A DNA stretch of 63,962 nucleotides, the filler included, from Parasitella parasitica NRRL 2501 (Eukaryota; Fungi; Mucoromycota): NCBI GenBank assembly GCA_025201805.1. It is 8 parts of 8 records of this genome, joined end to end, with 100 filler letters (N's around TTAATTAATTAA, not from the genome) between each part and the next. Parts side by side here need not be neighbours in the genome. Positions count along the whole stretch, not along the records: positions 41,706 to 53,197 come from MU619300.1; 7 more parts are not named here. One strand, written 5' to 3'. The notes under the pieces are model-generated. The model had not been told where the DNA came from. It ran no database searches and saw only the letters and a program-made list of their open reading frames with translations. Below are positions 695-53,297 of the stretch, one piece after another (the first letter of the stretch is position 1; every line of letters starts with the position of its first letter). The position numbers and the translations under genes are program-made.

Positions 695-2033
695 AGTTTT
701 TTCCACGGTGCGCGGCTTTGAAAGGTATAAAGAGGAGGAGATAATATTACAAAAAATTTATTGATTAATATATGGAAAATAAAGCGTGGCTTGAAGGCCT
801 ATAACCACATTCGAAGTCGGAGTGGAGGCAACCACCTCAATTGTGTTAGGAACGACACAAAATTCTCAATTTCGGTTGTTTGTATTAAGCATTGTAGAGA
901 CAAGAGAAACAACTCACATGTCAATTACAATAATACACCATTCGAATGCTACAATGTATTCAAACTTTGCTGTCATAATTAAAAGTCTAGAGAAGAACTT
1001 GAGACTTGAAATAACTGTTTTTCCCATTTTGTCCTCTTTTCAATAAGACTTTAAATTGAGACAACTTTTCATCCAAGCAACCAATTTTCAAAATATAAAA
1101 GGCATTATATTCAACAACATCAAGTTTAACTTATTGTATCACTTTAGTGCACCAGATTATAGTTTCCCCCTTAGTTTTGTCACTTCAAAATGTTTACTGT
1201 ATTGCATGCATTAACTGTTTACGCAAAAATACGGTCACTGTTAGGCGTATTAAAAAATTGGCAACCCCCCCCCTTTTTTTTTTTTTTGCTGCTTCACTAC
1301 TTCTACGACGCTATTATCATACTTCTACATATACTACTCTTATCTTTGGTTATCACTACGACACAAACGCATGCACTTTGTATTCATTATTGTTGGTAAC
1401 ATACGTTATACCTCTTTGATTGTGGGTAAAGTCGATTTTTTCCTTAAAAACAGTAAATATTACACACGTTTTCTAAAAGACCATAACTAACACTCTCATA
1501 CGCGTTTTTTTATAGAACCTACCACAAGAAAACAATATACAGGATGGCGTGTTTCTAATGCAGTAGTTCATTCAGGTATTATCATTTACTATGATTTTGT
1601 AAGAGCTTTTTTACTAATTGCAAAAGCTTTTGTTTTACATTTGTAGTTTCGATTCTCTTTTAATGTCAAGTGGATGGCCTATCACTGAAACTTGACGTTA
1701 GGTCTTTATCCGGGTCATACAGGAGCATGTAGGCTGTTTCTACTCATTGACTGTGCTTACCCTAGCAGTTCTTGAGATGGGCCATTTTATCCTAAGCTGT
1801 GAAGTGTGGTAAGGCATTTTCCGGCTATTTAGGGTGGGGTATTCATTGAAAATCTACCAATTTCTATTTTTGGTCAAATTTCAAGCCCCGCTAACAACAA
1901 AACAGGGGGAAACCCTGTTTTTTTGTTTTTAGGATTTTGGTGTTGACTTAGCCAAATTAATCGTGTTTTTATGAGAAAAACAAAAATAGTAAAGACATTA
2001 TTTACTTTGCAATGCATTCACTATGATGATCTG

Positions 2034-2345
2034 TGATGTGTCGATTTCCCAACCGGAAGCCAAACTCAAATAAACTCAATCCTGAACACAATTCAGGAAC
2101 ATATCCCAGTGGATCATGTTCCTTATTTATAACTCGACATGAAATGTTCATGGACAATAGATACAATCTATGATTCCATTCTCTAAATCACACCTTGTAT
2201 CAGACATATATCTTATCCTTCCATCAGTTTACTTAGATTCACTAGTAAATAAACCATCATTTTTCCATGTAGTAAACGAGATCTTGACCTGATTAATTCA
2301 CAACCGTTTTATTCGAACAATCTCTTATTCTGATAAATTATGTAT
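2034..2345 (-). repeat. Unclassified interspersed repeat (A/B family), module A
   Basis: Reverse complement of ~36770-37080 and 25351-25530 (e.g. TTTAGAGAATGG, ACTAGTGAATCTAAGT, AAACGGTTGTGAATTAATCAG). Confidence 0.75.
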
Positions 2346-2521
2346 AAAGCCTCTGTTTTTGAATACGAGAAACGAATCTTTACCTGATTAATATCTGTCA
2401 AACTTTTTTTAGGGTAAATCAATCACTTTTACTAAACGTGTTTTTTAGAGCATTTGCATTCCTTTTAGAAACATTTTATTAATCATCTAGTAAAGTGGCA
2501 ACAGCAGAGATACTTTTTTAA

Positions 2522-2668
2522 GAGTAACTGAAGGCAGCGAGCTGCTCTTATTGAACCCATTCAAAATTTCATTCGGCACTCAATCGATGTGTCCCCTAAA
2601 TGCTACAATATAGACTTTACAATCATTTCAATATTTGGTCTTATCTTTCGGGGCAATTCAACCTTGCA
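2522..2668. repeat. Degenerate dispersed repeat shared with 14649-14851
   Basis: Shared blocks GAGTAAYTGAAGGCA, GCACTCAATCGATGTGT, AATATTTGGTC, GGGCAATTYAACCTTGCA. Confidence 0.65.
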
Positions 2669-2842
2669 CAAAATTCCAAAATTACTCAAAACAGTGGGTG
2701 GTATTTTTAAACATCCTGTGAATTGAGAGTCGAAGCACAGTAGTTCGATGCTAACGAAATGCAGGATTTTAATTTAGTGGTTATCCTGTGTTGACTTAGT
2801 GGATAATTGCGTGATGTTACAAATAAATATTGATCTTAATAT

Positions 2843-3942
2843 TTAGCAGATTTCTTCTTTGAAGGTAGGACGATTAGAAAAGTAGTTGGTGCTGTACCTT
2901 ATCCAACCATCGCAATCTTCTTTGGTGTTTTCTCTACTGGAATCTTTAATATACTGCGAAAATTCATTTTTGCCCAAGCCTGGCTTTCTCTTTGTCAAAA
3001 TTTTGAGCTTTGAAAAGCTTTCTTCGATTGGAATCAAAAAAGGCGAATAAGGAGGCTAGAAGTGTAGTTTATACCCTGTAGTCTGGATGTAATAATTTTT
3101 GACTTCACAGGAAATATGGATTCCAGCATTGTCCATTATGAAATAACGCGGTGCAGCATTACTATCATCGAGTCTTTTGATCAAAGGTTCCCAGAAAATT
3201 GATAAAAATTGCTGAAGTCGTACCTCCTTTACATTTTTAGCGGAAACATCTTCAACACTTTTGTTCATGATTGCTATGATAATAGTAACGCTCGGCGCGC
3301 ACTTCGTCTTGGTATATTTATCGTAGCGTTTTTACCTTTGCGAGACCATCCTTGTCGACAGATCAGATTTACGTTAAAACTTGATTCATCTATAAAGAAG
3401 CAATTAGTTTTGTAGGATATTCCTAGGCCTTCCAAAGATTCGACGAAAGTCTTTCTTGAGACGATAGTAGCCGGATCGTTTCGTCTTTTTCAAGGGACTT
3501 TGATCTTTTCAACGTAGATCCGATGTGTTTTCTGATTTTTCGAGGAAAATGCCAGAAAAAGAGATGCCTTTCTCACGGCTATCATTAAACTCCTCATATA
3601 ACTCGTCCTGCATCGTCCCAAGAGTCAGAGCACAGTTTTTATCGAAAAGTTCAATTGGATATCCTAAATGAATCTCGCTAAGCTTGCTGGCTTCAGTCTT
3701 TCTACCCCCTCTTGGCTTCGGCATAACTTCATGCGTTTTCATCCAGTGATCTCTGATCCTATCAACTGTTGATCTTGGTAAGCCAAATAGCCTAGCAGCT
3801 GCAGAGACACTCATGTCTTCTTCTCTGATTGTGAAACCCATTATTCTCTCACAAGTCTCTAAAGATATTTTGTTCTTTTTATTAATTCTTTTCTAGTAGT
3901 CTTGTTATTGGTGGCAATATAGTTTTTTTTATTCGATTTCAT
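2843..3942 (-). pseudogene. Tc1/IS630-like DDE transposase pseudogene
   Basis: HTH (MSVSAAARLFGLPRSTVDRI...PRGGRK), first Asp in IDESSFNV, then YFIMDNAGIH...F*PPYSPFLIPIEE with 35 residues between D and E. Premature TAG at 3056 and frameshifts. Confidence 0.85.
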
Positions 3943-41705: not shown

Positions 41706-42256
41706 AAAAACTCAAATACCACAGCTATAGGAATAAGCAAAAGGCATTGACCGAAATGTGCAAGCGTTTGTTTACAGGTAGCAGAAAATATCAAGAAGAC
41801 AATCCTGATATACAGCAAGCAAATCAACAAAAGTGGAAACCGCTAGCCCCTAGAGACAATGCTGGTGAGGCTGAAAGACCTACAGTGGTGGCGTTTGGCT
41901 CTGCTCTGTTCGGTGGACTTCGTGGGAATGTACCCTCTCCAACAAAAGTGTTCAGAAAAGCCTTGCTAAATTACGTCAAGTCGATCAGACGGAACCGACC
42001 AAATTCAAGAAAGTACGTGGTTATGATTGACGAGTACCTGACAAGTCAAATATGCCCCAGATGCCACCTACGAAGTACTACTAACGAACGAGACAATGCC
42101 AATTTTAAGATCCATCCAGTTCTCAGCTGCAACACCTGTCACACTCGATGGAACAGAGATCATATGGCAAGTCTCAATATACGCTCAATCTTCTTGCATA
42201 TGGCTGCCAACAACAACAACCGGCCGGAAGAGTTTCAGCGAGGTATGCTATCATGA
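41706..42256 (+). CDS. Fanzor1 (TnpB-like RNA-guided endonuclease), C-terminal part; 5' end lost in a gap (Fz-B)
   Basis: Open from the gap: KLKYHSYRNKQKALTEMCKRL, VVAFGSALFG, RuvC-II IDEYLTSQ, Zn finger CPRC...CNTC, RuvC-III WNRDHMASLNI, RPEEF. Confidence 0.9.
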
Positions 42257-42390
42257 TATTAATATGGATTTGATTATTTCATAGACTAATATCACTATTA
42301 TCGTTTGCCTACAAATAGCTTAAGCAATACTATGTCTTGCATAACAGCAAGACACCCCTTATTTATGGGTAAGTTAGCCTATTGAAAAAA
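42254..42390 (+). ncRNA. Candidate omegaRNA scaffold of Fz-B
   Basis: Stems TGATATTA/TAATATCA (42254-42294), TGTCTTGC-ataaca-GCAAGACA (42333-42354), ACCC/GGGT and enclosing AGCTTA/TAAGTT, directly after the Fanzor stop. Confidence 0.45.
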
Positions 42391-42399
42391 AAAAGTTTG

Positions 42400-42541
42400 A
42401 TTGGTCCAAAAACTAATATGTCCCCTTCTACTTATTGCTGTCCCATTTTCATACTGGTGTCTCACTTTCATTGCGACGTCCAAATTCAATTTTAAAATGA
42501 CCCAAATTTTTTCTTACTGGCCCAATTAGTTTCGTCGACTG
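42400..42541 (+). mobile_element. Tc1/mariner-like right terminus with subterminal repeats
   Basis: Ends ...GGCCCAATTAGTTTCGTCGACTG followed by TA (reverse TA|CAGTCGAC). About 7 degenerate TGTCCCAATT-like motifs at ~20-bp period. Confidence 0.65.
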
Positions 42542-42639
42542 TATAGGAATAAAATGCCTCTTAGTTTTTCTGAGGAAGCTTTTGATTATAATGCCTATTG
42601 TAGACTTACGAGATGAAGAACTCTTTTTTTTTTATGAAG

Positions 42640-42706
42640 ACGAGCCGTTTTACATCCCCCAATAAGGAAGGTCAAAATATATTGGGGGGGGTGTAAAACA
42701 GCTCGT
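42640..42706. repeat. Inverted-repeat hairpin homologous to the Helitron-associated end at 55957-56061
   Basis: ACGAGCCGTTTTACATCCCCCAATA / TATTGGGGGGGGTGTAAAACAGCTCGT. The loop contains GAAGGTC as in the 56-kb copy. Confidence 0.7.
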
Positions 42707-43940
42707 GTCTTTTATATATTTTGCAATAATAGGAAAACTCGAATCACTTGCAATTATGACATCTGTATATGGCAAAAGAGACAAATACGCTGCAAAAGTT
42801 ATTTGTGACACTGTTACTAATACTGGACAAATAATGTATAATTTAGAGTTGATCAACTTGTTATGTTTTACGTAAGGATTATTCGCTCTTATTTTCAAGA
42901 TTTGGTTTGCTTGTGATCACTCTATAAATTGAGTGAAAAAGCATTCCTCTTTACGTAAGTTTACACATATGACTAAGTTTCGATTTTTTGAAATCTGATT
43001 TTATGGATATACTGTTTAAAATGAAACAAATACGTGTTTAATTTATCATAGTGATTTACTTAGTAGTTCTTTTTAAAGAAAAAGAAAGATTCATTATGAT
43101 ATTTTTCATATTCTCTTGACGGTATAGTATCCGCAAACATAGTTTAATCGAAAAAGAAACGTGGCTGTGCAATTTGTTTTGTTCCTTTAACATCTTCGTG
43201 TAAGTTAAACAAAACAACAAATACTCTGTATCTAAGGATATTAAAAAGTAAAGAACTTTAATATAACAATTTTATTGCCAAAGATTGCATAAACTTTGAT
43301 ATCGAATGTGTTATGGACAGTTAATAGCATCATACAAAGATGGCATCAATCTAAATTGCACTTTATCATGTTACAAGATGTTTATACATGCATAAAGCGT
43401 AGAAATACTTTAAATATATTTATATGGTATGGCGGCTTTGTTGAGAAATGTTCATTAATGAAATAATGCTTAATTCATTTTAAAGGGAATGATGTCTTTT
43501 CCCAAGATGCTTTTCTATACGTATCATAATCTTATAGTTGAAACACTAATACTGTGTATTCTCAAAGCTATTATCCTACAATAAACTACAGACAAAACTG
43601 AAAAATATGAAGTACTATACACCTCAATGTTAACTCTGAGCTGCATTCGACATTAAAAAAAGGTCATTTGCAATTACTTGTAGATCGATATCATACACTT
43701 TTAGCAACACTTTTTTTTTGTATACAGGAAACTTCTATTTTCAAGCTTTATAAGCAAATGATAATACATCAAATTTCTTTCATCTTCTCTATCCTTTGTT
43801 TACATAATTTTGGGAATTACTAACGTTTGAAAAATTAGTAGAAAAGAACAAGCGTTCATCTCACAAACTTATATTTATAAATACCTCTATTTCGTTAACA
43901 ACATCTTATAGTATCCTTTATAACATTTGATCTGCTTTTA

Positions 43941-44843
43941 ATGAAAACTTGTGTCAATAAAACTACCCATAATACCACTATCCTACATAATCAGCCTCGC
44001 TCTGATTGCAGTAACTCTGGCACCCAACTAATGGATACTGTAACCATGTCATTCCTGGACATGGATGAATGGGTAGCACAAGAGCTTCAACGAATTATAA
44101 AAAACCAAGTTCCAAGAAACTGTTTCTCGTTCGAAGCATTAATCAGTATAATTGAGGGTATCTATCAAGAAGGACACTATGCTTTGTTTTACAGCCCTTG
44201 CTCACCTTTGAATGAAACGTCTCAATGTATGACTCATAATTCAAAAGCACCTGAGATTAGTACCGCATTAAGATTGCCACAAGCAACGCAGAAACCGAGC
44301 AAGGATCAACAAGATGATGGTGCTAAAGAACTGATTTCCATTAGCAAAAAGTGTCTGGCAACCAATACATTGGCAATCAGTACCCATCATCTAACTCAAA
44401 AAAACCTGATCATGGCGTTTATGAAGCTGGTTTTCCACTGCCATAAGCAACATGACCCTAAACATTTCTACTTGCAACGGTATCGAAAGCCGCTGGAACT
44501 TTTGATAGAGCTTGAAAACATGTGCGAAACGTATTCCTCATGGACATCTCTAACAGATGCCAGCACAGCAGACGACACACATGTTGTGGATGCTGGTATT
44601 ATCATCCGAATTCAAAAGCGTTTGCAGTGCATCTTATTTGGTGATCAAATACCCCTTGTAGATACACTTGTTTGCCCTTGGACATTGATAAGCTTATGGA
44701 CTCAGCAGGGAAATCCTTTGAATAGCGATTTACAGCAAGGCTCAAGTTGCAAAAAATGGATAGAACTTGGTGTTTTCTCATATAAGTTTGCGAAAAAGGC
44801 TTGCGGCATTGGTGAAATAATAGATGCATGTGAATTAGCATGA
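43941..44843 (+). CDS. Hypothetical protein, 300 aa
   Basis: 903-bp open frame in AT-rich DNA; no recognisable motif. Confidence 0.55.
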   Translation: MKTCVNKTTHNTTILHNQPRSDCSNSGTQLMDTVTMSFLDMDEWVAQELQRIIKNQVPRNCFSFEALISIIEGIYQEGHYALFYSPCSPLNETSQCMTHNSKAPEISTALRLPQATQKPSKDQQDDGAKELISISKKCLATNTLAISTHHLTQKNLIMAFMKLVFHCHKQHDPKHFYLQRYRKPLELLIELENMCETYSSWTSLTDASTADDTHVVDAGIIIRIQKRLQCILFGDQIPLVDTLVCPWTLISLWTQQGNPLNSDLQQGSSCKKWIELGVFSYKFAKKACGIGEIIDACELA

Positions 44844-45596
44844 ACTCAGGCTCAGAATACCCTGTAATTGCCAGACATGAATATTATACAATACGCAACT
44901 AGATATGTTATGAACTACCGCTGGTGCGGTATTTGTGCGAAGTTTAGGCGTCAAGTAGTGTAACCTTGATAAATAATAAAATGCCTTTTAATTCTGCACG
45001 TTGTACTTGCGGCATTTTTTCTTGAGATGATATTATTGCACCTGTATCCTTTCACTGGCATGTATAAATCAAACAGATGTATGTGATCATGGTACTATAC
45101 ATACCATATAATGTAATCAATATATATACGACGCTGATATCCGGGAACAGTACTTGACAAGTGTATTGTTGTCGCCATATATCTCATGATTTCATTCATT
45201 TTGTCCAATCAATAAACCTCATAATGATCTGAATACTGTGCGACATTCTTGATTGGGTCTGATAATAAAGGTGAGGATTCTCCTCATCTCTCCAGACGAG
45301 TATATACAAACATGAGCAGCTTGCGATCCAATGGACTATTTCACGTGAATCATCTATGGATCGATAATGATGATATTGCCAAAACTACTGCAGGGAAATG
45401 ACGTCGTATTGTATTAAATCATTTTATTCCACTGCTGCTGATGCCTACAGAGGCTACTGCCGCTTATAAAATTTAAGCGTCATTTCAATAATCTCTTCTT
45501 TCTTCTCTTTCCTCATTATTACCTTTTTCTTGTATAAACAGTACTATCTTTTTATTTCTTGGACATTCATCTCTAGAAATATATATACAATTCATC

Positions 45597-46764
45597 ATGG
45601 GTAGGTACAATTGTAGCGTATATTTGCAAAAAGGATTTAATTATAAAAAAGCAGATTCAGTGATTTCAGCGCCCATCTCAGGCACTTCATCTCCAGCACA
45701 GAAAAGAACCAAAATCTCTGAAACGGATTATCAACCTCAACATAAAACGCTGACTGCAGACTCGCCCCTACTGCCTCTCGGACTAGATATTATGGGATAC
45801 GACTTTAAAGTGAACGAGGTATTGCCTTCTTGTTTATTGTTTGCATAGAAACAGAGCGGATAACATGATTCTCCATGCATTGTATGATAGCCGCCCACAG
45901 ATCGTGCAGTTCGCATCTATTGCGACGGTATCTACGACCTGTTTCATTTTGGACATGCAAAAGCCCTCGAGCAAGCTAAAAAATCATTCCCGGAAGTTTA
46001 TCTGCTAGTTGGTGGTAAGTACATACACCATATAATCGCTTTCAGATCAGACGAATATTTACAGTGCAAACCTGTAGTGTGTAATGATGTGGAGACCCAT
46101 AAGCGTAAAGGGAAGACGGTAATGAGCGACATTGAACGTTATGAGTCTGTTCGTCATTGTAAATGGGTGGACGAGGTGGTGCCCGACGCTCCCTGGTTTG
46201 TTAACCAAGATTTTCTCGATAAACATCAGATTGATTATGTAGCACATGATGCAGAACCCTATCAATCCACCGAGTCAGGTGATGTGTATGCCTTTGCCAA
46301 AGCACAAGGAAGATTTCTGCCCACGCAGCGTACGGATGGTATATCCACATCTGATCTGATCACCCGAATCGTTCGGGATTACGATGCCTATCTACGCAGA
46401 AATCTCGAAAGAGGTGTAAGCGCAAAAGACTTGAATATCTCCTTTTTGAAAGAAAGAGAAATCAAGACCAAGAAATCCATTGACGATCTCAAAAATCAGA
46501 TCAAGCATGTTGTTTTGGAGCACCTTGGTGCCTGGGAAGATCAAAGTCATGACTTCATTAGGAGTTTTGCTGGCAGATTTGGAGCCGAAGATGTCGTTGT
46601 AAGTTTTCTAGTGTGTGCTGGATATTGTATGCTGATGTGCGACATAGGAAAAGTTCTTGACAAAACGAAGATTAGCACTTGGTGATAAAAGAACCCGTAG
46701 TCCAAGCAGTAATGATAGTGGGTCATCTGCTTCGTCTTCGCAAAGTATCCACTCTTCTACGTAA
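45597..46764 (+). CDS. PCT1: Choline-phosphate cytidylyltransferase
   Basis: [15 protein letters not shown] (HxGH), [33 protein letters not shown]. Exons 45597-45600, 45655-45818, 45891-46014, 46078-46598, 46648-46764. Confidence 0.94.
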
Positions 46765-47240
46765 TGGCGCTCTAATCCTTTAATATGATGTATATTTTTT
46801 AATGTACTATATCATACTGATGATATGTATTCTCTTTCACCATTTAACAACTCTATTATAAACTACCTTATTGCATTGATATTGGTGTCTTACATACATT
46901 TTTGCAAGTGCAATTGACGAGACAGTTGCTCTCCTATGGGGATGATAGTCATCTAAACCGAATTCTACTGTATAATTTGATTTCGAGCACATTGCACTTG
47001 TTGGTTTGTATCAAACAAGATCGATCGTATTTTACAACCAATGAAACATCTATTGCATCCTTTTTTTTTATAAGAAAAAATTTATTGTGTAGTATGTGTT
47101 GCGTGTATAAATAATGGACAATTTCAAATCTCTTCCTTCACATTGACCCAACTGCTTGAAGCAAAAAAATTTGGAGGCTCTGCAGTGTATGTAGCTGATA
47201 AGGAGTTTGCATGACAAAAAGATGTTTGGCGATGTTTGGA

Positions 47241-47869
47241 TTAAGCCCACATCTTACTGATGAATTCAGTCAAGCCAATGTCATTAGTGTTGAATTGGTA
47301 GCAGCCAACAAGAACACCTGTAGTGCTGACCCATAAAGTGCCAGTCATCAATTTGTTCAAAATAACACTTTTGCGAGCATTGAAATAATCTTTACAAATA
47401 GAGTAATGATTTAGATAACAAAGATTTCCCCGCATTTTATTATCTCCACTTACCAGTGATACAAGCATCCCAACCTAGTAGATAAATACTATTGTTAGCG
47501 ACACATCTACTGCACTATTAAAGGTCTTACCAATGTGAAGATGAATTGGAAGAACAACACCCAAAAGAACATCGGTAACAGGTGAAGCACCATATGTGAG
47601 TTGAGATGCAATGATGGGAACTAAAGCAAGAGAAGCAGCACGTTCAAGATCCCAATGATAAGAGCCATGAAGACGATCTGGCTTGTGAGTAGCAATGGCA
47701 TTGGATTGAGAAACAGCTATCCTTTCACAGATTAATAAAACAGCATGCAAAAAAGGAGTTTCACAAAAAACTTACAAGAGTGGATCTTTACAAGACCCAT
47801 AGGTTGTTGGCGCGCTAAAAGACGTGCAGTTGAGCGAAAAGCGGGTGTATTAGCAAGACGAAGAGCCAT
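47241..47869 (-). CDS. SDH4: Succinate dehydrogenase cytochrome b small subunit (CybS, Sdh4/Tim18 family)
   Basis: Presequence MALRLANTPAFRSTARLL, HGSYHWDLER, HLHIG...DY, FNTNDIGLTEFISKMWA. Confidence 0.92.
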
Positions 47870-48478
47870 TTTTCTTTGTTTAATAAAAGAGTGGGGAAGA
47901 GTTTAATTTGACTGTAAGTTAAAAGGTGAGAATAAGTCTTCAAAATGTTGTAATCAGGATTAATAAAATACTCCACCCTTGACCTTTTTGGCACTGTCGT
48001 CGGGCGTACCCGCTTACGGCTGATGACGCAGTCTCAGTTGGTACCTGTTACTCATGTGAAATTTGCGATTGTATCCAGGATAAACGATTAGCAGACCAGT
48101 TTGCATCTTGCAGAAAAGAGCTTTTTGTTGATAAATGTATCTGTTCGCATGATATTTATCTTTTTTCTCATTCGTATATGCTGTATGAGTTACGTTTTTT
48201 TTTTTTTTTTTTTTTTACCCCGCATTGTAATTTGTAATGCTACCCATCAAGATGCCAACGCTTTGTTGCCATGACAAAAAAATTGCCGTTCCTGTATGTC
48301 TCAGATCACCTTTGTTTCCATAGCAACTGTTGGAATATTTTTGAATCTTATCTATCGAGGATCGCAATGTCATTTTGCCCATTGCACGACTCCTTGGCCA
48401 TTAAATAACCGCAAAATTGAGTGACTTTAGTCGCGCAACTGTAAAAAAAAGTAATTTTCATCATTCAACATCTTTATT

Positions 48479-48772
48479 ATGGACTCTACAACTCGAGCTC
48501 AATATGAAGAAGATAAAGCAAAGTTATTAGAAAAAGTAAAATTTAGTTTGGATCAACTTCAAACTAATTTGAATTCAATAAATCGAAATTTGGAAAGTGC
48601 TAATGCCGTCGGTTCACAATTTCAGGCATCCTCGTATTTATGGAGTTCTTTTCACAAAGTTATTGCTCCATCCACTGATCATTCAGCAAGACAACCAGCA
48701 AGCGCAAAAGATATTTTACCACTAACAAAAGAGTTGGAAGGCAAATCCTTGGGAGAAGAACAACGATTATAG
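48479..48772 (+). CDS. DAD1: DASH/Dam1 kinetochore complex subunit Dad1
   Basis: NLNSINRNLESANAVGSQFQASSYLWSSF matches the Dad1 pattern NLN.LN..LE....VG.EF..V..LW..F. Confidence 0.82.
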   Translation: MDSTTRAQYEEDKAKLLEKVKFSLDQLQTNLNSINRNLESANAVGSQFQASSYLWSSFHKVIAPSTDHSARQPASAKDILPLTKELEGKSLGEEQRL

Positions 48773-49031
48773 ATCATAAATGGAAAATTACATTATATAT
48801 GTAAATATACAGTTTAATCCTAATCTTGGTCACTTAATAAATAGAGATTTTCTTGTGCGTTTTATTGATTACATAACACAGATACCTCAAAGAAAAAAAA
48901 TCGTTTAGCAGAAAACAAATGACACAAACCTACTGAATCAAATTGACGATTAGTTTAATAATTATTGTCTTTTCAAAAAAAAAAAAAATATACATGTATA
49001 AAATAACCAAGCCATCGTAATCAAAAATTGA

Positions 49032-49209
49032 CTAAAATCTGGTGAAAACGTTGGTGGAGGATTCTTCTGTTTTTGTGCGAGTAAACAATTCAGGGCGTGA
49101 TCCTATTTCTCTTGAGCTGGTTAGAATTTTCTTGAAATTCAGTAGGGCTGCAAGATCGCGATTCCACAATCTTGGCTTTGATTGACCTTAGCAGTTAAAC
49201 TTTGTGCAT
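49032..49209 (-). pseudogene. Fanzor1 last-exon remnant (Fz-C)
   Basis: After an acceptor-like TGACAATAG: CTKFNC*GQSKPRLWNRDLAALLNFKKIL...GSRPELFTR, i.e. second Zn pair plus RuvC-III. Not in the ORF track. Confidence 0.75.
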
Positions 49210-49499
49210 CTATTGTCATTTTGCAATTTCTGGAAAAAAAAGTTCAAGTAAATGATAAAGGTCATGGTGATTGTAATAATATATATTAGGACTTCTGATA
49301 AAAAAAAACCTTTTATTTCTGATAAAAGCCAAAAAGTTTCTGAGAGAAGAGAAATGCTTCCCTAAAAAGATTTCGAGTGGGGGTTTCCATATTAAGAGAA
49401 AAGAGTGATTGCTTGTTTCATTCATAGTGTTGTAAAATAAGTTTAAGGTAGTTTTTTAAAAAGGTTACGGTCGGTGGTCTATTGACAAACATCTGTGAT

Positions 49500-50100
49500 T
49501 CAGGGCGTAAGTGTGTCTGTTGACTTTGGATCAAAAACCTTTAATTGGATTCAGGAACGGAGAGTATAGTTGAAGATAAATACATTCATGTCCTTAGGAT
49601 TTCATAAATTTCTATACAGACAATTTTTTATGTGTGCGCGTGTTATCCTGGTGGCAGTTTGTCTGCTCTTCTCTGGCAGTTTCTTGTACCTTCAATTGAT
49701 TTGGCGTCTTCTAGTGTATAAGGCCATGTCAGATATATACCAAGCTTGGTTCTTTATATCCAATTACACAGTAGAATAGCCATCCTTTCCGTAATATTAG
49801 AAAGGTTCAAAAGTGTGCGTAGATTTTAGGCGCCTGATTATTTATTTTTTTGGTCTACGCGAACTTCAGTGCGTTGTTGTCAGGAAAAGGCAAAAACTGT
49901 AAGAAAACAATGTTTAGAAATCTCAAGCACAAAAAAAGGTAATTCAAAGTAATGAATTCGACTATAGGGCACTTTTTGATTACATATTTGCATAGCTTAG
50001 ATCTAGTTTTTATGCTCTTTGAGTTGAAAACAGATGAAGACAACGACTTTTCTGACTTTTTTCGGAAAAGTATTTTTCAAAATCGGAGCGTGAGATCATC
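49500..50100 (-). pseudogene. Degenerate Tc1-like DD34E transposase
   Basis: 49647-49522 reads DNTRTHKKLSV*KFMKS*GHECIYLQLYSPFLNPIKGF*SKV, equivalent to DNAPIH...YLPPYSPFLNPIEEFWSKV. Upstream boundary uncertain. Confidence 0.7.
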
Positions 50101-51280
50101 AGGTCCGTTACAGATATGCAAGTGCTATCATTAGAAAGCCAAGAAGCACAAAATTTGAATAAATTAAATTTAAATTGTTTTTATTTTGAATTGGGTAAGT
50201 TATGACTTTTCAAAGCTAATGCTTCCTTCAAAAAACCACTATTTTTCTTGGATGGCGGCAATTAAACGTGTCCAAAACAAGGAAGGAAAAATTCTTTCAG
50301 ATACTCCATTTGGACAATTCGAGAACAAAAATTACTCTTTTAAGGCAAGATATCATTCTCTGATACTATGCATACCATGGCTGTCATTCTATGATAATAG
50401 CTGTAGTTTTGGGCGCTCTACACGATGGTATCATTTCATAATCCCCATATGTTTATGGAAGGAATTCTGTTGAAAAAACCTCAAAATCAGATCAAGCGAG
50501 AAAAGTCAATATTTTGCTTAATCAGAGCGCATCTCCAGTCTTTCAGATCAAGGATTGGTCTTTTGCGATCATTTTCCTCTAATATATGCTATAGTAAAAA
50601 GTTTTATTTTTGAGGTCAAAATTGAGGATAATGCATAACTGATGATTTTGGATGTGTGGATACAAGGAAAAAACTGAAAAAAATCGGTCATTTTGCATCG
50701 AAAAAAAAATCATGCTCAAATTGTACCAAAATCATATATAATATTGTTTATTCCCAATGGATACTATTTCCGGTGTAATCAGGGCACAGGAAGCTCAAGT
50801 TTTTGCTTTTAAGCTGTAAAAAAAATATCTATCTGCAGATGATATCACGCCAATGTCAATTCTAATACATGACACAGCTCTATAAAGTAAGTATTCTTGA
50901 TGCCACAAGTATACATTTCTTTATAGTAGTATGGCAAAACAGGTATGGCTCATCGAGTTGGAAGCAAAAGAGGATAATTAATGAATCCAACGTTTTTTCT
51001 GTAATAACCCCTTGCTATTTGCGAATAATTACCAAGTTGCCAATTGCTAGTGGCAGAGAGGCCCTATTACCATTGTTGCTTATATAAATGATAAATTTAA
51101 GTTCTAGAGTTCCTTTTTTTTTTGTAATTTCAATGCTAAACTTGTAAAAATAGAAAGTAAAATAGATTAGGATTGAGGTTGAGGGTAATTTTACTAACAA
51201 AAGTTAAGCTTCATAATAAGCTTCTGGTTGATTCCAAGTTCCAGACACTGTACTATAGAGTATCAAATTCTGAATAGGGG

Positions 51281-51343
51281 ATAATTTGCTATAACGAACG
51301 CATTTTTGTACACCAACCCGTCCGTTTTAACGAATCTCGACTG
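51281..51343. mobile_element. Orphan pogo/Tigger-like terminal inverted repeat
   Basis: GCTATAACGAA...CGTTTTAACGAATCTCGACTG followed by TA. No partner end found. Confidence 0.5.
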
Positions 51344-51516
51344 TATATTCTTTCCTTAATATTGGATATGCTGACTTAACTCAACAGATGTAACACAAAA
51401 TGGTAGTAATGCGAAGTTAAAAAAATAGAGATTGTCATTAGCTGAATATGCTATAATTTTTCATTATGTAAATGCATAATTTGACGGATATATACCTTAT
51501 TAGTATATGTAGTTTA

Positions 51517-51558
51517 ATACTTTGGTACTTTGATACTTTGATACTTTGATACTTTGAT
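51517..51558. repeat. Tandem 8-mer (ATACTTTG) x5
   Basis: Read directly from the sequence; one mismatch. Confidence 0.9.
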
Positions 51559-52200
51559 GGTTTTTGTGGTTTAACCTTTTTTTTTTTTTTGGTTTAAATA
51601 CCTATGCAATTTTACAGACTCGTCTAAATATTTGAGTTTATTTAGATGTCTAATATCTAACGGATATATCTCAAATAATTCATCAATTATGAAATTCAAA
51701 CAATTTTGTGGTAAAAGGTTTAAATAGGCCACAGTGGATCATAGCAAATTAGAGCATATCTCCATCGGAGATGCCAAAAAAGCAGACAAAACATTTCCGG
51801 GTTGTAAAAAAAAAAGGGTGCTTTAAATGGCTTTTTGTTTAGTAATTGTCTCTGCTTGCTTACTGTTGCTTTGCTTTTTTGTTTCTGAAGCTCTTTGAAT
51901 TACTCCCTTGGCTCTTGAATCCATTGTATTCTCTTTTACTATTTTACTCTTACACTCTTGGAAAGTAAATTCACCCAATGACGAAAATGAATTCGCCCTG
52001 AAAGAAAATCAATTCACCTGATGACAGGAACAAAATTCGTGTTGTACGAAATATAAATTCGTCTTGGCTGACAAATCATATGTCCTGTTGCCAAGATTGT
52101 TTTGTAGGATAAGTCTTGACAAACTTTGAATATAAAAGAGCACGCCTAGTGTTTGTCTGTGTTTACTTCTTTTTCACAATTGCATCACAAATCACAGATA

Positions 52201-52919
52201 ATGAACATTCAATTCTTGCTTGAAAATGGGAAAGGATCTGTCGTCGACGAGTATGGCAGACCTGAACCAATGGATTAGATTGTCGATGAGGAACAGTTTC
52301 GTCTTGAAACGTTGAGTTTTTATACACAATATTTAGCTCAACTGCCTCTGGAGAGCGAGAAAAGGATAGATGCAATGCAGGTAGAAAAGAAGGCAAAAGC
52401 CTAACGGTGGTGTTATTATGAGGGAGATTTCAGTGAAGCGAAATTATACACACTATTCTGATCAGGACAAAGTGAGGTTCTTCAAACTGTTGTTTGAGAG
52501 ATGTTTGAGTGCGGCCGCTGCTGTAAAACAACTTGGGATTCATGTTCGTACAGCACAAAAATGGGCTGCGCAATACGAGAAAGATCCTGACAGCATCTTT
52601 GAGAAACGGAGAAAGACTGGCCGTCCACGTATTCTCCATGACGAACACAAAAGCGCTATTCTCGAGTGCATTGATGAGAATCCTTCCATCGTCCTAGACG
52701 AAGTATTGAAGAAGTTTAAGCAAATTTTTACCGAATTAAAAGTATCTAAAACTACCTTGTTCGATTTTGTAAAAACAACATTGCAATTTATCTCTTAAGA
52801 AAGCTCAGCTTCAACCCATAAATCGGAATAGTGAAGAAAAGATTCAAGAGCGCTTAGATTGGGTTCGTAAATGGGAAAAAACAGACTTGGATTTTACGAA
52901 AAACTGTGTCTTTCTTGAG
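52201..52919 (+). pseudogene. Tc1/IS630-like transposase, N-terminal half
   Basis: HTH SAAAAVKQLGIHVRTAQKW, TGRPRIL, frameshift at ~52778 into CNLSLKK...RNSEEKIQERLDW...NCVFL, truncated at the first catalytic Asp. Confidence 0.85.
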
Positions 52920-53297
52920 AAACCGGAAAGATTGTCGTTTTTTTTTCAAAATTTGATGGTGCTTCTTCTGCTTCAGATGGAGCATTCATTTTGTCGAGAT
53001 GGCGGCAGCACAAGCACTGAATTGTCGCTGACTTGACATTAAGCTGGCATATGCCATTTTTTTTGACGTGCCATGCTGTACTATTTTTTTACAGTCAAAG
53101 AAAATGAGACCAGAATAGGGCTGTCGCAAAAATAAGCATCTTCGAAAGCATTTTCATAAGCATCTTCATAAGCATCTTTTAAAATGCCGCGTTATATNNN
53201 NNNNNNNNNNNNNNNNNNNNNNNNNNNNNNNNNNNNNNNNNTTAATTAATTAANNNNNNNNNNNNNNNNNNNNNNNNNNNNNNNNNNNNNNNNNNNN

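What the first reader, a model, noticed from the sequence alone, without database searches (positions are those of the whole stretch)
41706..42560. Fanzor1 with intact nuclease C-terminus inside a Tc1/mariner-like end (Fz-B)
Seen: a 182-codon open frame from the gap with RuvC-II Glu (IDEYLTS), CxxC/CxxC zinc finger and RuvC-III Asp (WNRD), followed by a hairpin-rich segment and a Tc1-like terminus ending CGACTG|TA at 42541. Established: Fanzors are eukaryotic TnpB-derived RNA-guided DNA endonucleases carried by transposons. Inference: the best candidate here for a functional, uncharacterised programmable nuclease system. RuvC-I and the N-terminus are hidden by the gap.
Basis: partly seen in the sequence, partly recalled or inferred. 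Interest (0 to 1): 0.8.

Follow-up and report, generated by a model that had tools for sequence, protein, structure and literature searches.

The report
Fanzor1 gene end in mariner-type transposon
This is the last third of a transposon from the fungus Parasitella parasitica whose only gene is a Fanzor1-type RNA-guided DNA cutter. It is a new member of a known kind, notable mainly because nearly identical copies sit in the genome of Mucor circinelloides, a genus this mycoparasite attacks.

Summary
Window 41708-42253 is an open 182-codon frame cut by an assembly gap. It carries the Pfam TnpB/Cas12f zinc-ribbon domain, the Fanzor-type active-site Glu (IDEYLTSQ), CPRC/CNTC and the WNRD Asp. A 285-nt tail follows and ends CGACTG|TA at 42541.

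The piece is Parasitella parasitica scaffold MU619300.1. There the element starts about 3.8 kb upstream with a matching ~112-nt inverted repeat and a TA duplication. It encodes nothing but the Fanzor gene, so it is a non-autonomous Tc1/mariner-type element.

The family evolves under strong purifying selection (dN/dS about 0.1). Its 176-nt 3' non-coding stretch changes about three times more slowly than synonymous sites, which fits an omegaRNA template but does not prove one.

- The tail is not more folded than shuffled sequence.
- RuvC-I of this copy stays hidden in the gap.
- Every fully readable relative is broken, so function of this copy is open.

Copies in Mucor circinelloides are 93-97% identical (dS 0.04), while neighbouring host genes have dS about 1.5. 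This points to recent horizontal transfer.

Verdict: a real, ordinary Fanzor1 element of a family distinct from the characterised PpFz1.

The parts
41708..42256 (+). Last 182 codons plus the TGA stop of a Fanzor1-type gene. It holds Gly64 at the canonical RuvC-II position, the relocated catalytic Glu109 (IDEYLTSQ), the TNB zinc finger CPRC...CNTC, the RuvC-III Asp150 (WNRD), and a C-terminal RPEEF tail. Its 5' side is cut by an assembly gap.
   Evidence: Translation. Pfam PF07282 at E 3.1e-10. The top PDB profile hits are SpuFz1, PpFz1 and GtFz1. dN/dS is 0.08-0.12 against Benjaminiella, Cokeromyces and a Parasitella paralogue.
42257..42432 (+). Conserved 176-nt 3' non-coding segment between the stop codon and the right inverted repeat. 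It is the candidate omegaRNA scaffold template, which is an inference.
   Evidence: Raw divergence is 0.19-0.22 between lineages whose synonymous divergence is dS 0.70-0.74. By contrast, the 5' non-coding part of the element is largely unalignable between the same lineages.
42333..42354 (+). Conserved 8-bp hairpin TGTCTTGC-ATAACA-GCAAGACA, followed by a CCCC run, in the 3' non-coding segment.
   Evidence: It is present in all 7 aligned copies, with one compensatory change and several one-sided compatible changes. Covariation is not significant: 129 of 500 shuffles reach the observed value.
42433..42541 (+). Right terminal inverted repeat of the element. It ends ...GTCGACTG and includes about two 19-nt subterminal repeat units at its inner side.
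   Evidence: It is 96% identical in inverted orientation to L003 231-342. Six ends are aligned. The left end carries 5.5 copies of a 19-nt repeat, ATGAAAATGGGACACCAGT. The copy number at the right end varies between copies.
42542..42543 (.). TA target-site duplication at the right end. The matching TA lies before the left repeat at L003 229-230, outside the piece.
   Evidence: TA flanks all six ends at three loci and the right ends of L009, L004 and L005.
42243..42318 (+). Possible 76-nt terminal intron, G|GTATGC...AATAG|C. It uses the same 5' splice motif as two upstream introns of the gene. Whether it is spliced is uncertain; the unspliced G-x-L-S-stop ending is conserved.
   Evidence: Sequence. 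Upstream introns with GTATGC...YAG are at L003 958-1023 and 1369-1436. The P0002 gene model uses this intron. The codons of the unspliced ending are conserved.

Best explanation
The finding is the 3' third of a non-autonomous Tc1/mariner-type DNA transposon in Parasitella parasitica.

Structure of the element:
- About 3.8 kb at this locus if the gap is sized correctly, and 4.4-4.7 kb in relatives.
- TA duplication, 5'-CAGT ends, and inverted repeats of about 110 nt with 19-nt subterminal repeats.
- Its only gene is a Fanzor1-type TnpB homologue of roughly 860-910 residues. The gene has a basic, NLS-like N-terminal extension built from short exons and a single long exon for the nuclease body.

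Shown here:
- The element boundaries.
- The intact C-terminal RuvC/TNB residues with the Fanzor-specific relocated glutamate.
- Family-wide purifying selection on the protein.
- Constraint on the 3' non-coding DNA.

Inferred mechanism, by analogy with TnpB and the characterised Fanzor1s:
- A transcript running from the 3' end of the gene through the right repeat into the flanking DNA is processed into an omegaRNA. Its guide would be the flank starting at or just after the TA.
- The Fanzor-omegaRNA complex cuts the vacated or empty site, whose TA-containing left junction would act as the TAM.
- Repair from a filled copy restores the element. A transposase supplied in trans by an autonomous Tc1/mariner relative moves it.

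The family has recently crossed between Parasitella and Mucor circinelloides. Whether this particular copy is intact cannot be told, because RuvC-I lies in an assembly gap.

The confidence of 0.8 applies to the identity and anatomy. The omegaRNA-guided homing mechanism taken alone I put at about 0.5.
For: Identity of the protein:
- Pfam TNB domain.
- With the single fragment, weak matches to TnpB and three Fanzor1 structures. With a family profile, the top three PDB hits are exclusively Fanzor1: SpuFz1 at 1.8e-4, PpFz1 at 2.1e-3 and GtFz1 at 0.05. The alignments run through the RPxxF C-terminal tail.
- Full-length gene models of relatives (P0026, P0023, P0024) carry the RuvC-I motif GLDPG.
- Gly64 and Glu109 are 45 residues apart. 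This matches the published 'rearranged catalytic site' of Fanzors, in which the canonical Glu is replaced by Gly or Pro and an alternative Glu lies about 45 residues downstream (PMC10312701).

The element:
- Source scaffold identified.
- Left and right repeats and TA duplications.
- No room for a transposase, and none found among the ORFs.
- N-terminal exons with canonical GTATGC...YAG introns.

Selection:
- dN/dS 0.08-0.12 at dS 0.7-0.9 between lineages.
- The 3' non-coding stretch diverges only 0.19-0.22.

Horizontal transfer:
- 93-97% nucleotide identity between Parasitella and Mucor copies, including non-coding parts, with dS 0.035-0.044.
- Syntenic host genes next to the window copy have dS 1.48-1.65 against Mucor ambiguus in three of four genes, and the intergenic DNA is unalignable.
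Against: - RuvC-I of this copy is unseen: the gap is L003 1823-3227.
- All other copies examined are damaged:
  - L001: 1-nt deletion, and also gapped.
  - L002: a 126-bp deletion removes RuvC-I, plus a 355-bp insertion.
  - L008: frameshifts.
  - L009: in-frame stops and RuvC-III Asp changed to Val.
  - L007: frameshifts and no repeats.
  - L004 and L005: internal deletions.
- No RNA evidence. The 3' tail folds no better than shuffles (z -0.86), and covariation for the one conserved hairpin is not significant.
- The 3' constraint could reflect transposase binding sites or mRNA signals instead of an omegaRNA.
- AlphaFold models were too poor to test the fold.
- The first 5' exon lacks a clear AG acceptor in this lineage, so the true start codon is uncertain.
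- The window's right repeat deviates from the consensus within its first 25 nt.
Confidence: 0.8

Rival explanations
1. This copy is a dead relic. The hidden middle carries a disabling lesion, and the open C-terminal frame is simply too young to have decayed.
For: All seven other copies examined in five genomes are broken. Recent copies show relaxed constraint: window against L001 has 0 synonymous and 3 non-synonymous changes, and window against L002 has dN/dS 0.54. The window's right repeat has a private indel near the tip.
Against: Every visible part of this copy is open. That covers L003 872-1372 and 1438-1822 upstream of the gap and window 41708-42253. The assembler collapsed the middle in both Parasitella loci. 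This suggests several near-identical copies, that is, recent activity, and implies at least one recent functional source.
Confidence: 0.45
2. The conserved 3' non-coding segment serves transposition or mRNA processing, not a guide RNA. Candidate roles are transposase binding at subterminal repeats, the 3' UTR or polyadenylation, or a terminal intron.
For: The ends carry arrays of a 19-nt repeat typical of transposase binding sites. A GTATGC...AATAG intron-like unit and a GGTAAGT motif lie in the segment. There is no thermodynamic or covariation support for an extended RNA structure.
Against: The most conserved block (42320-42375) lies outside the repeats and has no counterpart at the left end, which argues against a symmetric transposase site. 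All characterised Fanzor1 and TnpB systems encode their omegaRNA at exactly this position (PMC10432273, PMC11423790).
Confidence: 0.3
3. The near-identity between the Parasitella and Mucor copies is an artefact, such as cross-contamination or mislabelled assemblies, rather than horizontal transfer.
For: Parasitella grows on Mucorales hosts, so mixed cultures are conceivable. Only one host-gene neighbourhood was compared, and against M. ambiguus rather than M. circinelloides itself.
Against: In each genome the element is embedded in long contigs with species-specific flanks: a 175-kb Parasitella scaffold, and 2.9-Mb and 229-kb Mucor contigs from two independent strains and projects. The insertion sites differ and each has its own TA duplication. 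The copies carry different private lesions.
Confidence: 0.05
4. It is a domesticated host gene derived from a Fanzor, no longer part of a mobile element.
For: The protein is under strong purifying selection.
Against: Intact inverted repeats and TA duplications are present. Multiple copies sit at unrelated loci. The element is absent from the syntenic loci of Mucor ambiguus and Benjaminiella.
Confidence: 0.02

Closest known systems
Fanzor1-only elements with mariner ends (e.g. PUl-4) and the Fanzor1-plus-transposase Mariner element MCi-1 of Mucor circinelloides (Bao and Jurka 2013, PMC3627910)
   Same: A Fanzor1 gene inside an element with inverted repeats and TA duplications. PUl-4-type elements likewise carry no transposase. 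The host group is also Mucorales.
   Different: MCi-1 has 20-bp repeats starting CTGTCCCG, a 686-aa Fanzor and its own transposase. The element here has ~110-nt repeats starting CAGTCGACG with 19-nt subterminal repeats, a protein of about 860-910 aa and no transposase. None of four diagnostic strings of this family occurs in that paper's sequence supplements. One of those files was truncated and its lines are wrapped, so absence is not proven.
PpFz1, the characterised Parasitella parasitica Fanzor1 (PDB 9CF0; PMC11423790)
   Same: Same host species and similar size. It shares the relocated Glu before the zinc finger (LIDEFRTS), the WNRD motif and the C-terminal RPxxF tail.
   Different: It is only distantly related: profile E 2.1e-3, and single-sequence E 0.56. 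PpFz1 has the FRI cyclophilin-binding insertion, which was not looked for here. PpFz1's TAM (ATN) and omegaRNA are known; nothing is known for this family.
SpuFz1 (Spizellomyces punctatus Fanzor1, PDB 8GKH; PMC10432273)
   Same: It is the best profile match among solved structures (E 1.8e-4). It has the same LLDEYKTSxxCPRC and WNRD motifs and the same RPEVF tail. Its omegaRNA is encoded at the 3' end of the gene and the transposon right end.
   Different: Low sequence identity. RNA-guided cleavage has been demonstrated for SpuFz1 but is untested here.
ISDra2 TnpB and other IS200/IS605 TnpB (OMEGA systems)
   Same: RuvC plus a TNB zinc ribbon, and an omegaRNA from the right end with the guide in the flanking DNA. 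The homing and retention role is the template for the mechanism proposed here.
   Different: TnpB is prokaryotic and about 400 aa. Most have a canonical RuvC-II Glu. It has no NLS extension or introns, and it is mobilised by TnpA (a Y1 transposase) without inverted repeats or duplications.

Membership tests
Fanzor1 (eukaryotic TnpB-like RNA-guided endonuclease) | TNB / OrfB zinc-ribbon domain with CxxC...CxxC | tested here: met
   PF07282 at E 3.1e-10, above the curated cut-off. CPRC and CNTC are in the translation.
Fanzor1 (eukaryotic TnpB-like RNA-guided endonuclease) | RuvC-III catalytic Asp (or Asn) in the WNR[DN] motif | tested here: met
   WNRD at residues 147-150. It aligns to WNRD of SpuFz1 and PpFz1 and to WNRN of GtFz1.
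Fanzor1 (eukaryotic TnpB-like RNA-guided endonuclease) | Rearranged RuvC-II: the canonical Glu replaced by Gly or Pro, with an alternative Glu about 45 residues downstream, just before the zinc finger | tested here: met
   Gly64 in VVAFGS and Glu109 in IDEYLTSQ are 45 residues apart. The criterion comes from PMC10312701. This is a sequence-pattern match only; there is no structural confirmation.
Fanzor1 (eukaryotic TnpB-like RNA-guided endonuclease) | RuvC-I catalytic Asp (GxDxG) | tested here: inconclusive
   It is hidden in the 1405-N gap of this copy. It is present as GLDPG in the relatives P0026, P0023, P0024, P0003 and P0005. In the Mucor copy L002 it is deleted.
Fanzor1 (eukaryotic TnpB-like RNA-guided endonuclease) | Closer to Fanzor1 than to Fanzor2 or TnpB | tested here: met
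   The top three PDB hits of the family profile are the three Fanzor1 structures, and no TnpB, Fanzor2 or Cas12 scores below E = 1. No phylogeny was built.
Fanzor1 (eukaryotic TnpB-like RNA-guided endonuclease) | Fanzor/TnpB fold (WED, REC, split RuvC, TNB) | tested here: inconclusive
   The AlphaFold2 models had mean pLDDT 41.1 (full-length P0026) and 51.7 (P0003 core). The alignments were too shallow, so no fold search was run.
Fanzor1 (eukaryotic TnpB-like RNA-guided endonuclease) | Cognate omegaRNA encoded at the 3' end of the gene and the transposon right end | not testable with these tools
   Only indirect evidence: the 3' non-coding DNA is about three times more conserved than synonymous sites, and there is one conserved hairpin. 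Fold z-score and covariation are not significant.
Fanzor1 (eukaryotic TnpB-like RNA-guided endonuclease) | RNA-guided, TAM-dependent dsDNA cleavage | not testable with these tools
   This needs biochemistry.
IS630/Tc1/mariner superfamily element | TA target-site duplication | tested here: met
   TA is found at both ends of three complete loci and at the right ends of three more.
IS630/Tc1/mariner superfamily element | Terminal inverted repeats with 5'-CAGT-type tips | tested here: met
   Repeats of about 112 nt are 93-99% identical between the ends, and all start TA|CAGTCGACG.
IS630/Tc1/mariner superfamily element | DD(E/D) transposase encoded by the element | tested here: not met
   The interior is filled by the Fanzor gene, and there is no transposase ORF in L002, L008, L009 or L003. 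The element is therefore non-autonomous and assigned by its ends only. The autonomous partner was not identified.

The most novel reading that the evidence does not exclude
A Fanzor1-only mariner-type element moved very recently between the fusion mycoparasite Parasitella parasitica and Mucor circinelloides. The route would be the cytoplasmic fusions through which Parasitella is known to pass nuclei and DNA to its hosts. At least one still-active source copy, possibly this one, would encode a working RNA-guided nuclease of a family not yet characterised.

This would give the first concrete case for the suggestion in Xu et al. 2024 (PMC11423790) that Fanzors take part in transposon-mediated gene transfer in this parasitic relationship.
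Probability: 0.35. Interest if true: 0.6.

Novelty: new member of a known kind. Interest (0 to 1): 0.4.

Why it matters
Fanzor1 nucleases are compact eukaryotic RNA-guided DNA cutters of interest for genome editing. A second Parasitella family, sequence-distant from PpFz1, with defined element ends gives a ready-made place to look for its omegaRNA and TAM.

The sharper point is evolutionary. The same element is nearly identical in a mycoparasite and in a genus it parasitises, while the host genes are saturated with synonymous change. That makes it a clean, testable example of horizontal transposon transfer in early-diverging fungi, and it bears on whether Fanzor elements ride the parasite-host fusion route.

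As a nuclease discovery it is incremental.

Tried and rejected
1. Structure route. AlphaFold2 on full-length P0026 (alignment A3) and on the RuvC core fragment P0003 (alignment A4) gave mean pLDDT 41 and 52. No fold search was run, because it would have been meaningless.

2. RNA route.
   - Rfam found only two sub-threshold miRNA-like matches, on the hairpin outside the element.
   - The MFE z-score of the tail is -0.86.
   - The RNAalifold consensus is weak, and covariation for the conserved hairpin does not exceed shuffles.
   - No covariance model was built, because only about four independent lineages are available.

3. More relatives. Scans of viral and metagenome contigs with the fragment were blank. 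The Thamnidium relative L006 shares no 3' non-coding homology.

4. Looking for the family in Bao and Jurka's supplements by diagnostic strings found nothing.

5. The Tc1-like transposase fragment at 52418-52910 was considered as the autonomous partner and rejected. No repeat similarity exists anywhere else in the piece.

6. The hairpin at 42637-42711 was considered part of the element and rejected. Homology of all copies ends at 42541 plus TA, and the hairpin is unique to this locus.

The large representative protein search was not used, because the family scans and word search had already placed the protein.

Full-length comparisons used database gene models as returned.

Full report
**What is in the window**

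The piece (41706-53197) starts right after a run of N. The frame beginning at 41708 is open for 182 codons and ends at TGA 42254-42256; the other two frames are full of stops. The translation contains:
- VVAFGS, with Gly64.
- VVMIDEYLTSQ, with Glu109.
- CPRC and CNTC.
- WNRD, with Asp150.
- The ending NNNNRPEEFQRGMLS.

Pfam places residues 102-158 in PF07282 (Cas12f1-like TNB, formerly OrfB_Zn_ribbon) at E 3.1e-10, above the curated cut-off. Against solved structures the fragment alone gives only weak matches, but they are to a TnpB and to the three Fanzor1 proteins SpuFz1, GtFz1 and PpFz1.

A profile built from 15 family members raises this. The top three hits are SpuFz1 (1.8e-4), PpFz1 (2.1e-3) and GtFz1 (0.05), and nothing else related appears. 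The alignments run through the zinc finger, WNRD and a shared C-terminal RPxxF tail.

Fanzors have lost the canonical RuvC-II glutamate to Gly or Pro and use an alternative glutamate about 45 residues downstream (PMC10312701). Here Gly64 and Glu109 are exactly 45 residues apart. The fragment therefore shows the Fanzor-type rearranged site. This is a pattern match, not a structural test.

**Where it comes from and what the whole element looks like**

An exact look-up of the neighbouring Dad1 protein identified the piece as Parasitella parasitica GCA_025201805.1, scaffold MU619300.1 (locus L003; window 41706 = L003 3228). In that scaffold the window's last 112 nt before 42543 recur inverted at L003 231-342 (96% identity). 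A 1405-N gap (1823-3227) lies in between.

I aligned six ends from three loci: L003 and L001 in Parasitella, and L002 in Mucor circinelloides. All show TA|CAGTCGACGAAACTAGGTTGGGCCAGTAAG..., and the flanks are unrelated beyond the TA. Homology with Benjaminiella (L009) and two Cokeromyces copies (L004, L005) also stops at CGACTG|TA.

The inner parts of the repeats carry a 19-nt unit (ATGAAAATGGGACACCAGT). There are 5.5 copies at the left end and a variable number at the right.

Between the repeats there is only the Fanzor gene:
- An ATG lies at L003 815 or 872.
- Two canonical short introns (GTATGC...YAG) lie at 958-1023 and 1369-1436.
- One long exon then starts MSQEFKK... and runs into the gap, re-emerging as the window's frame.
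- The N-terminal exons encode a basic, low-complexity extension (PRKKKGKEK), consistent with the NLS-bearing N-termini reported for Fanzors.

No transposase is encoded. The element is a non-autonomous member of the Tc1/mariner superfamily by its ends only. This kind was described by Bao and Jurka (PMC3627910). Their Mucor element MCi-1 has different ends and carries a transposase, and none of this family's diagnostic strings occur in their supplements.

**Is the gene alive?**

Between lineages the last 182 codons give dN/dS 0.08-0.12 at dS 0.70-0.90. The lineages compared were Parasitella/Mucor against Benjaminiella, Cokeromyces, and a second Parasitella family (L007). The protein has been kept functional during the family's history.

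Individual copies tell a different story:

| Copy | Lesions |
|---|---|
| L001 | 1-nt deletion, and itself gapped |
| L002 | 126-bp deletion that removes RuvC-I, plus a 355-bp insertion |
| L008 | frameshifts |
| L009 | in-frame stops, and Asp changed to Val in WNRD |
| L007 | frameshifts, and no repeats |
| L004, L005 | 2.3-kb deletion derivatives |

The window copy is open in every visible part, both upstream of the gap and in the window. Its RuvC-I region is unseen. Relatives' gene models show GLDPG at the expected place. I put the chance that this copy is intact at roughly one half.

**The 3' tail**

The 176 nt between the stop and the right repeat differ by only 0.19-0.22 between lineages whose synonymous sites differ by dS 0.70-0.74. 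The 5' non-coding part of the element is mostly unalignable between the same lineages. This segment is therefore constrained.

It is in the position where TnpB and Fanzor systems encode the omegaRNA (PMC10432273; PMC11423790). But it is not 'hairpin-rich':
- The fold z-score is -0.86.
- Only one 8-bp hairpin (42333-42354) is conserved.
- Its single compensatory change is not significant.

The segment also holds an intron-like unit (42243-42318) with the same GGTATGC donor as the upstream introns. Transposase binding or mRNA signals remain a live alternative to an omegaRNA.

**Proposed mechanism (inferred)**

1. A trans-acting Tc1/mariner transposase moves the element.
2. The Fanzor protein, loaded with an RNA that ends in flank-derived guide sequence beyond 42541, cuts the vacated or empty site next to a TA-containing TAM.
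3. Homology-directed repair re-copies the element, as for TnpB.

None of this was testable here.

**Horizontal transfer**

Copies in two independent Mucor circinelloides assemblies (PS15m, L002; 1006PhL, L008) are 93-97% identical to the Parasitella copies across coding and non-coding parts. Their dS is 0.035-0.044.

The host genes beside the window copy (a 300-aa ORF, choline-phosphate cytidylyltransferase, CybS and Dad1) are syntenic in Mucor ambiguus (L010) and Benjaminiella (L011), and neither locus carries the element. Against Mucor ambiguus:
- They are only 66-80% identical.
- dS is 1.48, 1.63 and 1.65 for three genes, and 0.31 for a 71-codon CybS exon.
- The intergenic DNA is unalignable.

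This is the signature of recent horizontal transposon transfer. Parasitella is a fusion parasite of Mucorales and a laboratory model for inter-species transfer of nuclei (PMC4807231 abstract). Xu et al. speculated that Fanzors might play a role in that relationship. The direction and the route are not resolved, and the host comparison uses one neighbourhood and a sister Mucor species.

**Verdict**

The identification as a Fanzor1 gene at a Tc1/mariner-type end is supported. The claim of a functional system is open. The element is a new family-level member of a known kind. Its most interesting property is the parasite-host distribution.

Noticed in passing
window 41706-42541, with L002 7051-11654 and L008 1643-6373: Parasitella and Mucor circinelloides copies of the element are 93-97% identical (dS 0.035-0.044). 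Adjacent host genes have dS of about 1.5 against Mucor ambiguus. This is strong evidence for recent horizontal transposon transfer between a mycoparasite and a host genus.
   Followed up: partly
window 42637-42711: A near-perfect inverted repeat with arms of about 30 nt (GAGCCGTTTTACATCCCCCAATA.../...TATTGGGGGGGGTGTAAAACAGCTC) lies 95 nt outside the right end of the element. The DNA fold z-score is -4.25. It is unique among the fetched loci. Rfam gives only sub-threshold miRNA-like matches. Its nature is unknown; it could be a foldback or a MITE remnant.
   Followed up: partly
window 52418-52910: A degraded Tc1/mariner-type transposase N-terminus: a 126-aa ORF with helix-turn-helix matches below Pfam cut-offs, then stops. 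It lies just before a second assembly gap at 53198. It has no repeat similarity to the Fanzor element, so it is not shown to be its partner.
   Followed up: partly
window 43941-48772: A block of host genes is syntenic with Mucor ambiguus and Benjaminiella. It comprises a 300-aa ORF with no Pfam family (53% identical to its Mucor counterpart), choline-phosphate cytidylyltransferase (exon 46077-46685), succinate dehydrogenase CybS on the minus strand (about 47240-47900) and DASH subunit Dad1 (48479-48772).
   Followed up: partly
P0025 (Umbelopsis isabellina) and P0022/P0024 (Benjaminiella poitrasii): The poorly conserved N-terminal 128 residues of the long exon are 74-78% identical in proteins annotated from Umbelopsis isabellina (a different order), Benjaminiella and Mucor. 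This hints that the family has crossed species boundaries more than once.
   Followed up: no
L002 10630-10984 and L002 around 10230: The Mucor PS15m copy carries a 355-bp insertion flanked by a short ACCTAC duplication inside the coding region. It also has a 126-bp deletion between two '...TDG' repeats that removes the RuvC-I motif precisely.
   Followed up: partly
window 51510-51557 and 53132-53178: There are short tandem arrays: an 8-nt unit TACTTTGA in about 5 copies, and a 12-nt unit ATAAGCATCTTC in about 4 copies. The second sits next to the second gap and recurs on the far side of that gap in the scaffold.
   Followed up: no
L003 838-890: The first putative intron, after MPPKRKP, has a GTAAAG donor but no obvious AG acceptor at the position implied by the Benjaminiella and paralogue gene models. 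The true start codon of the Parasitella/Mucor lineage is therefore uncertain (815 or 872).
   Followed up: no
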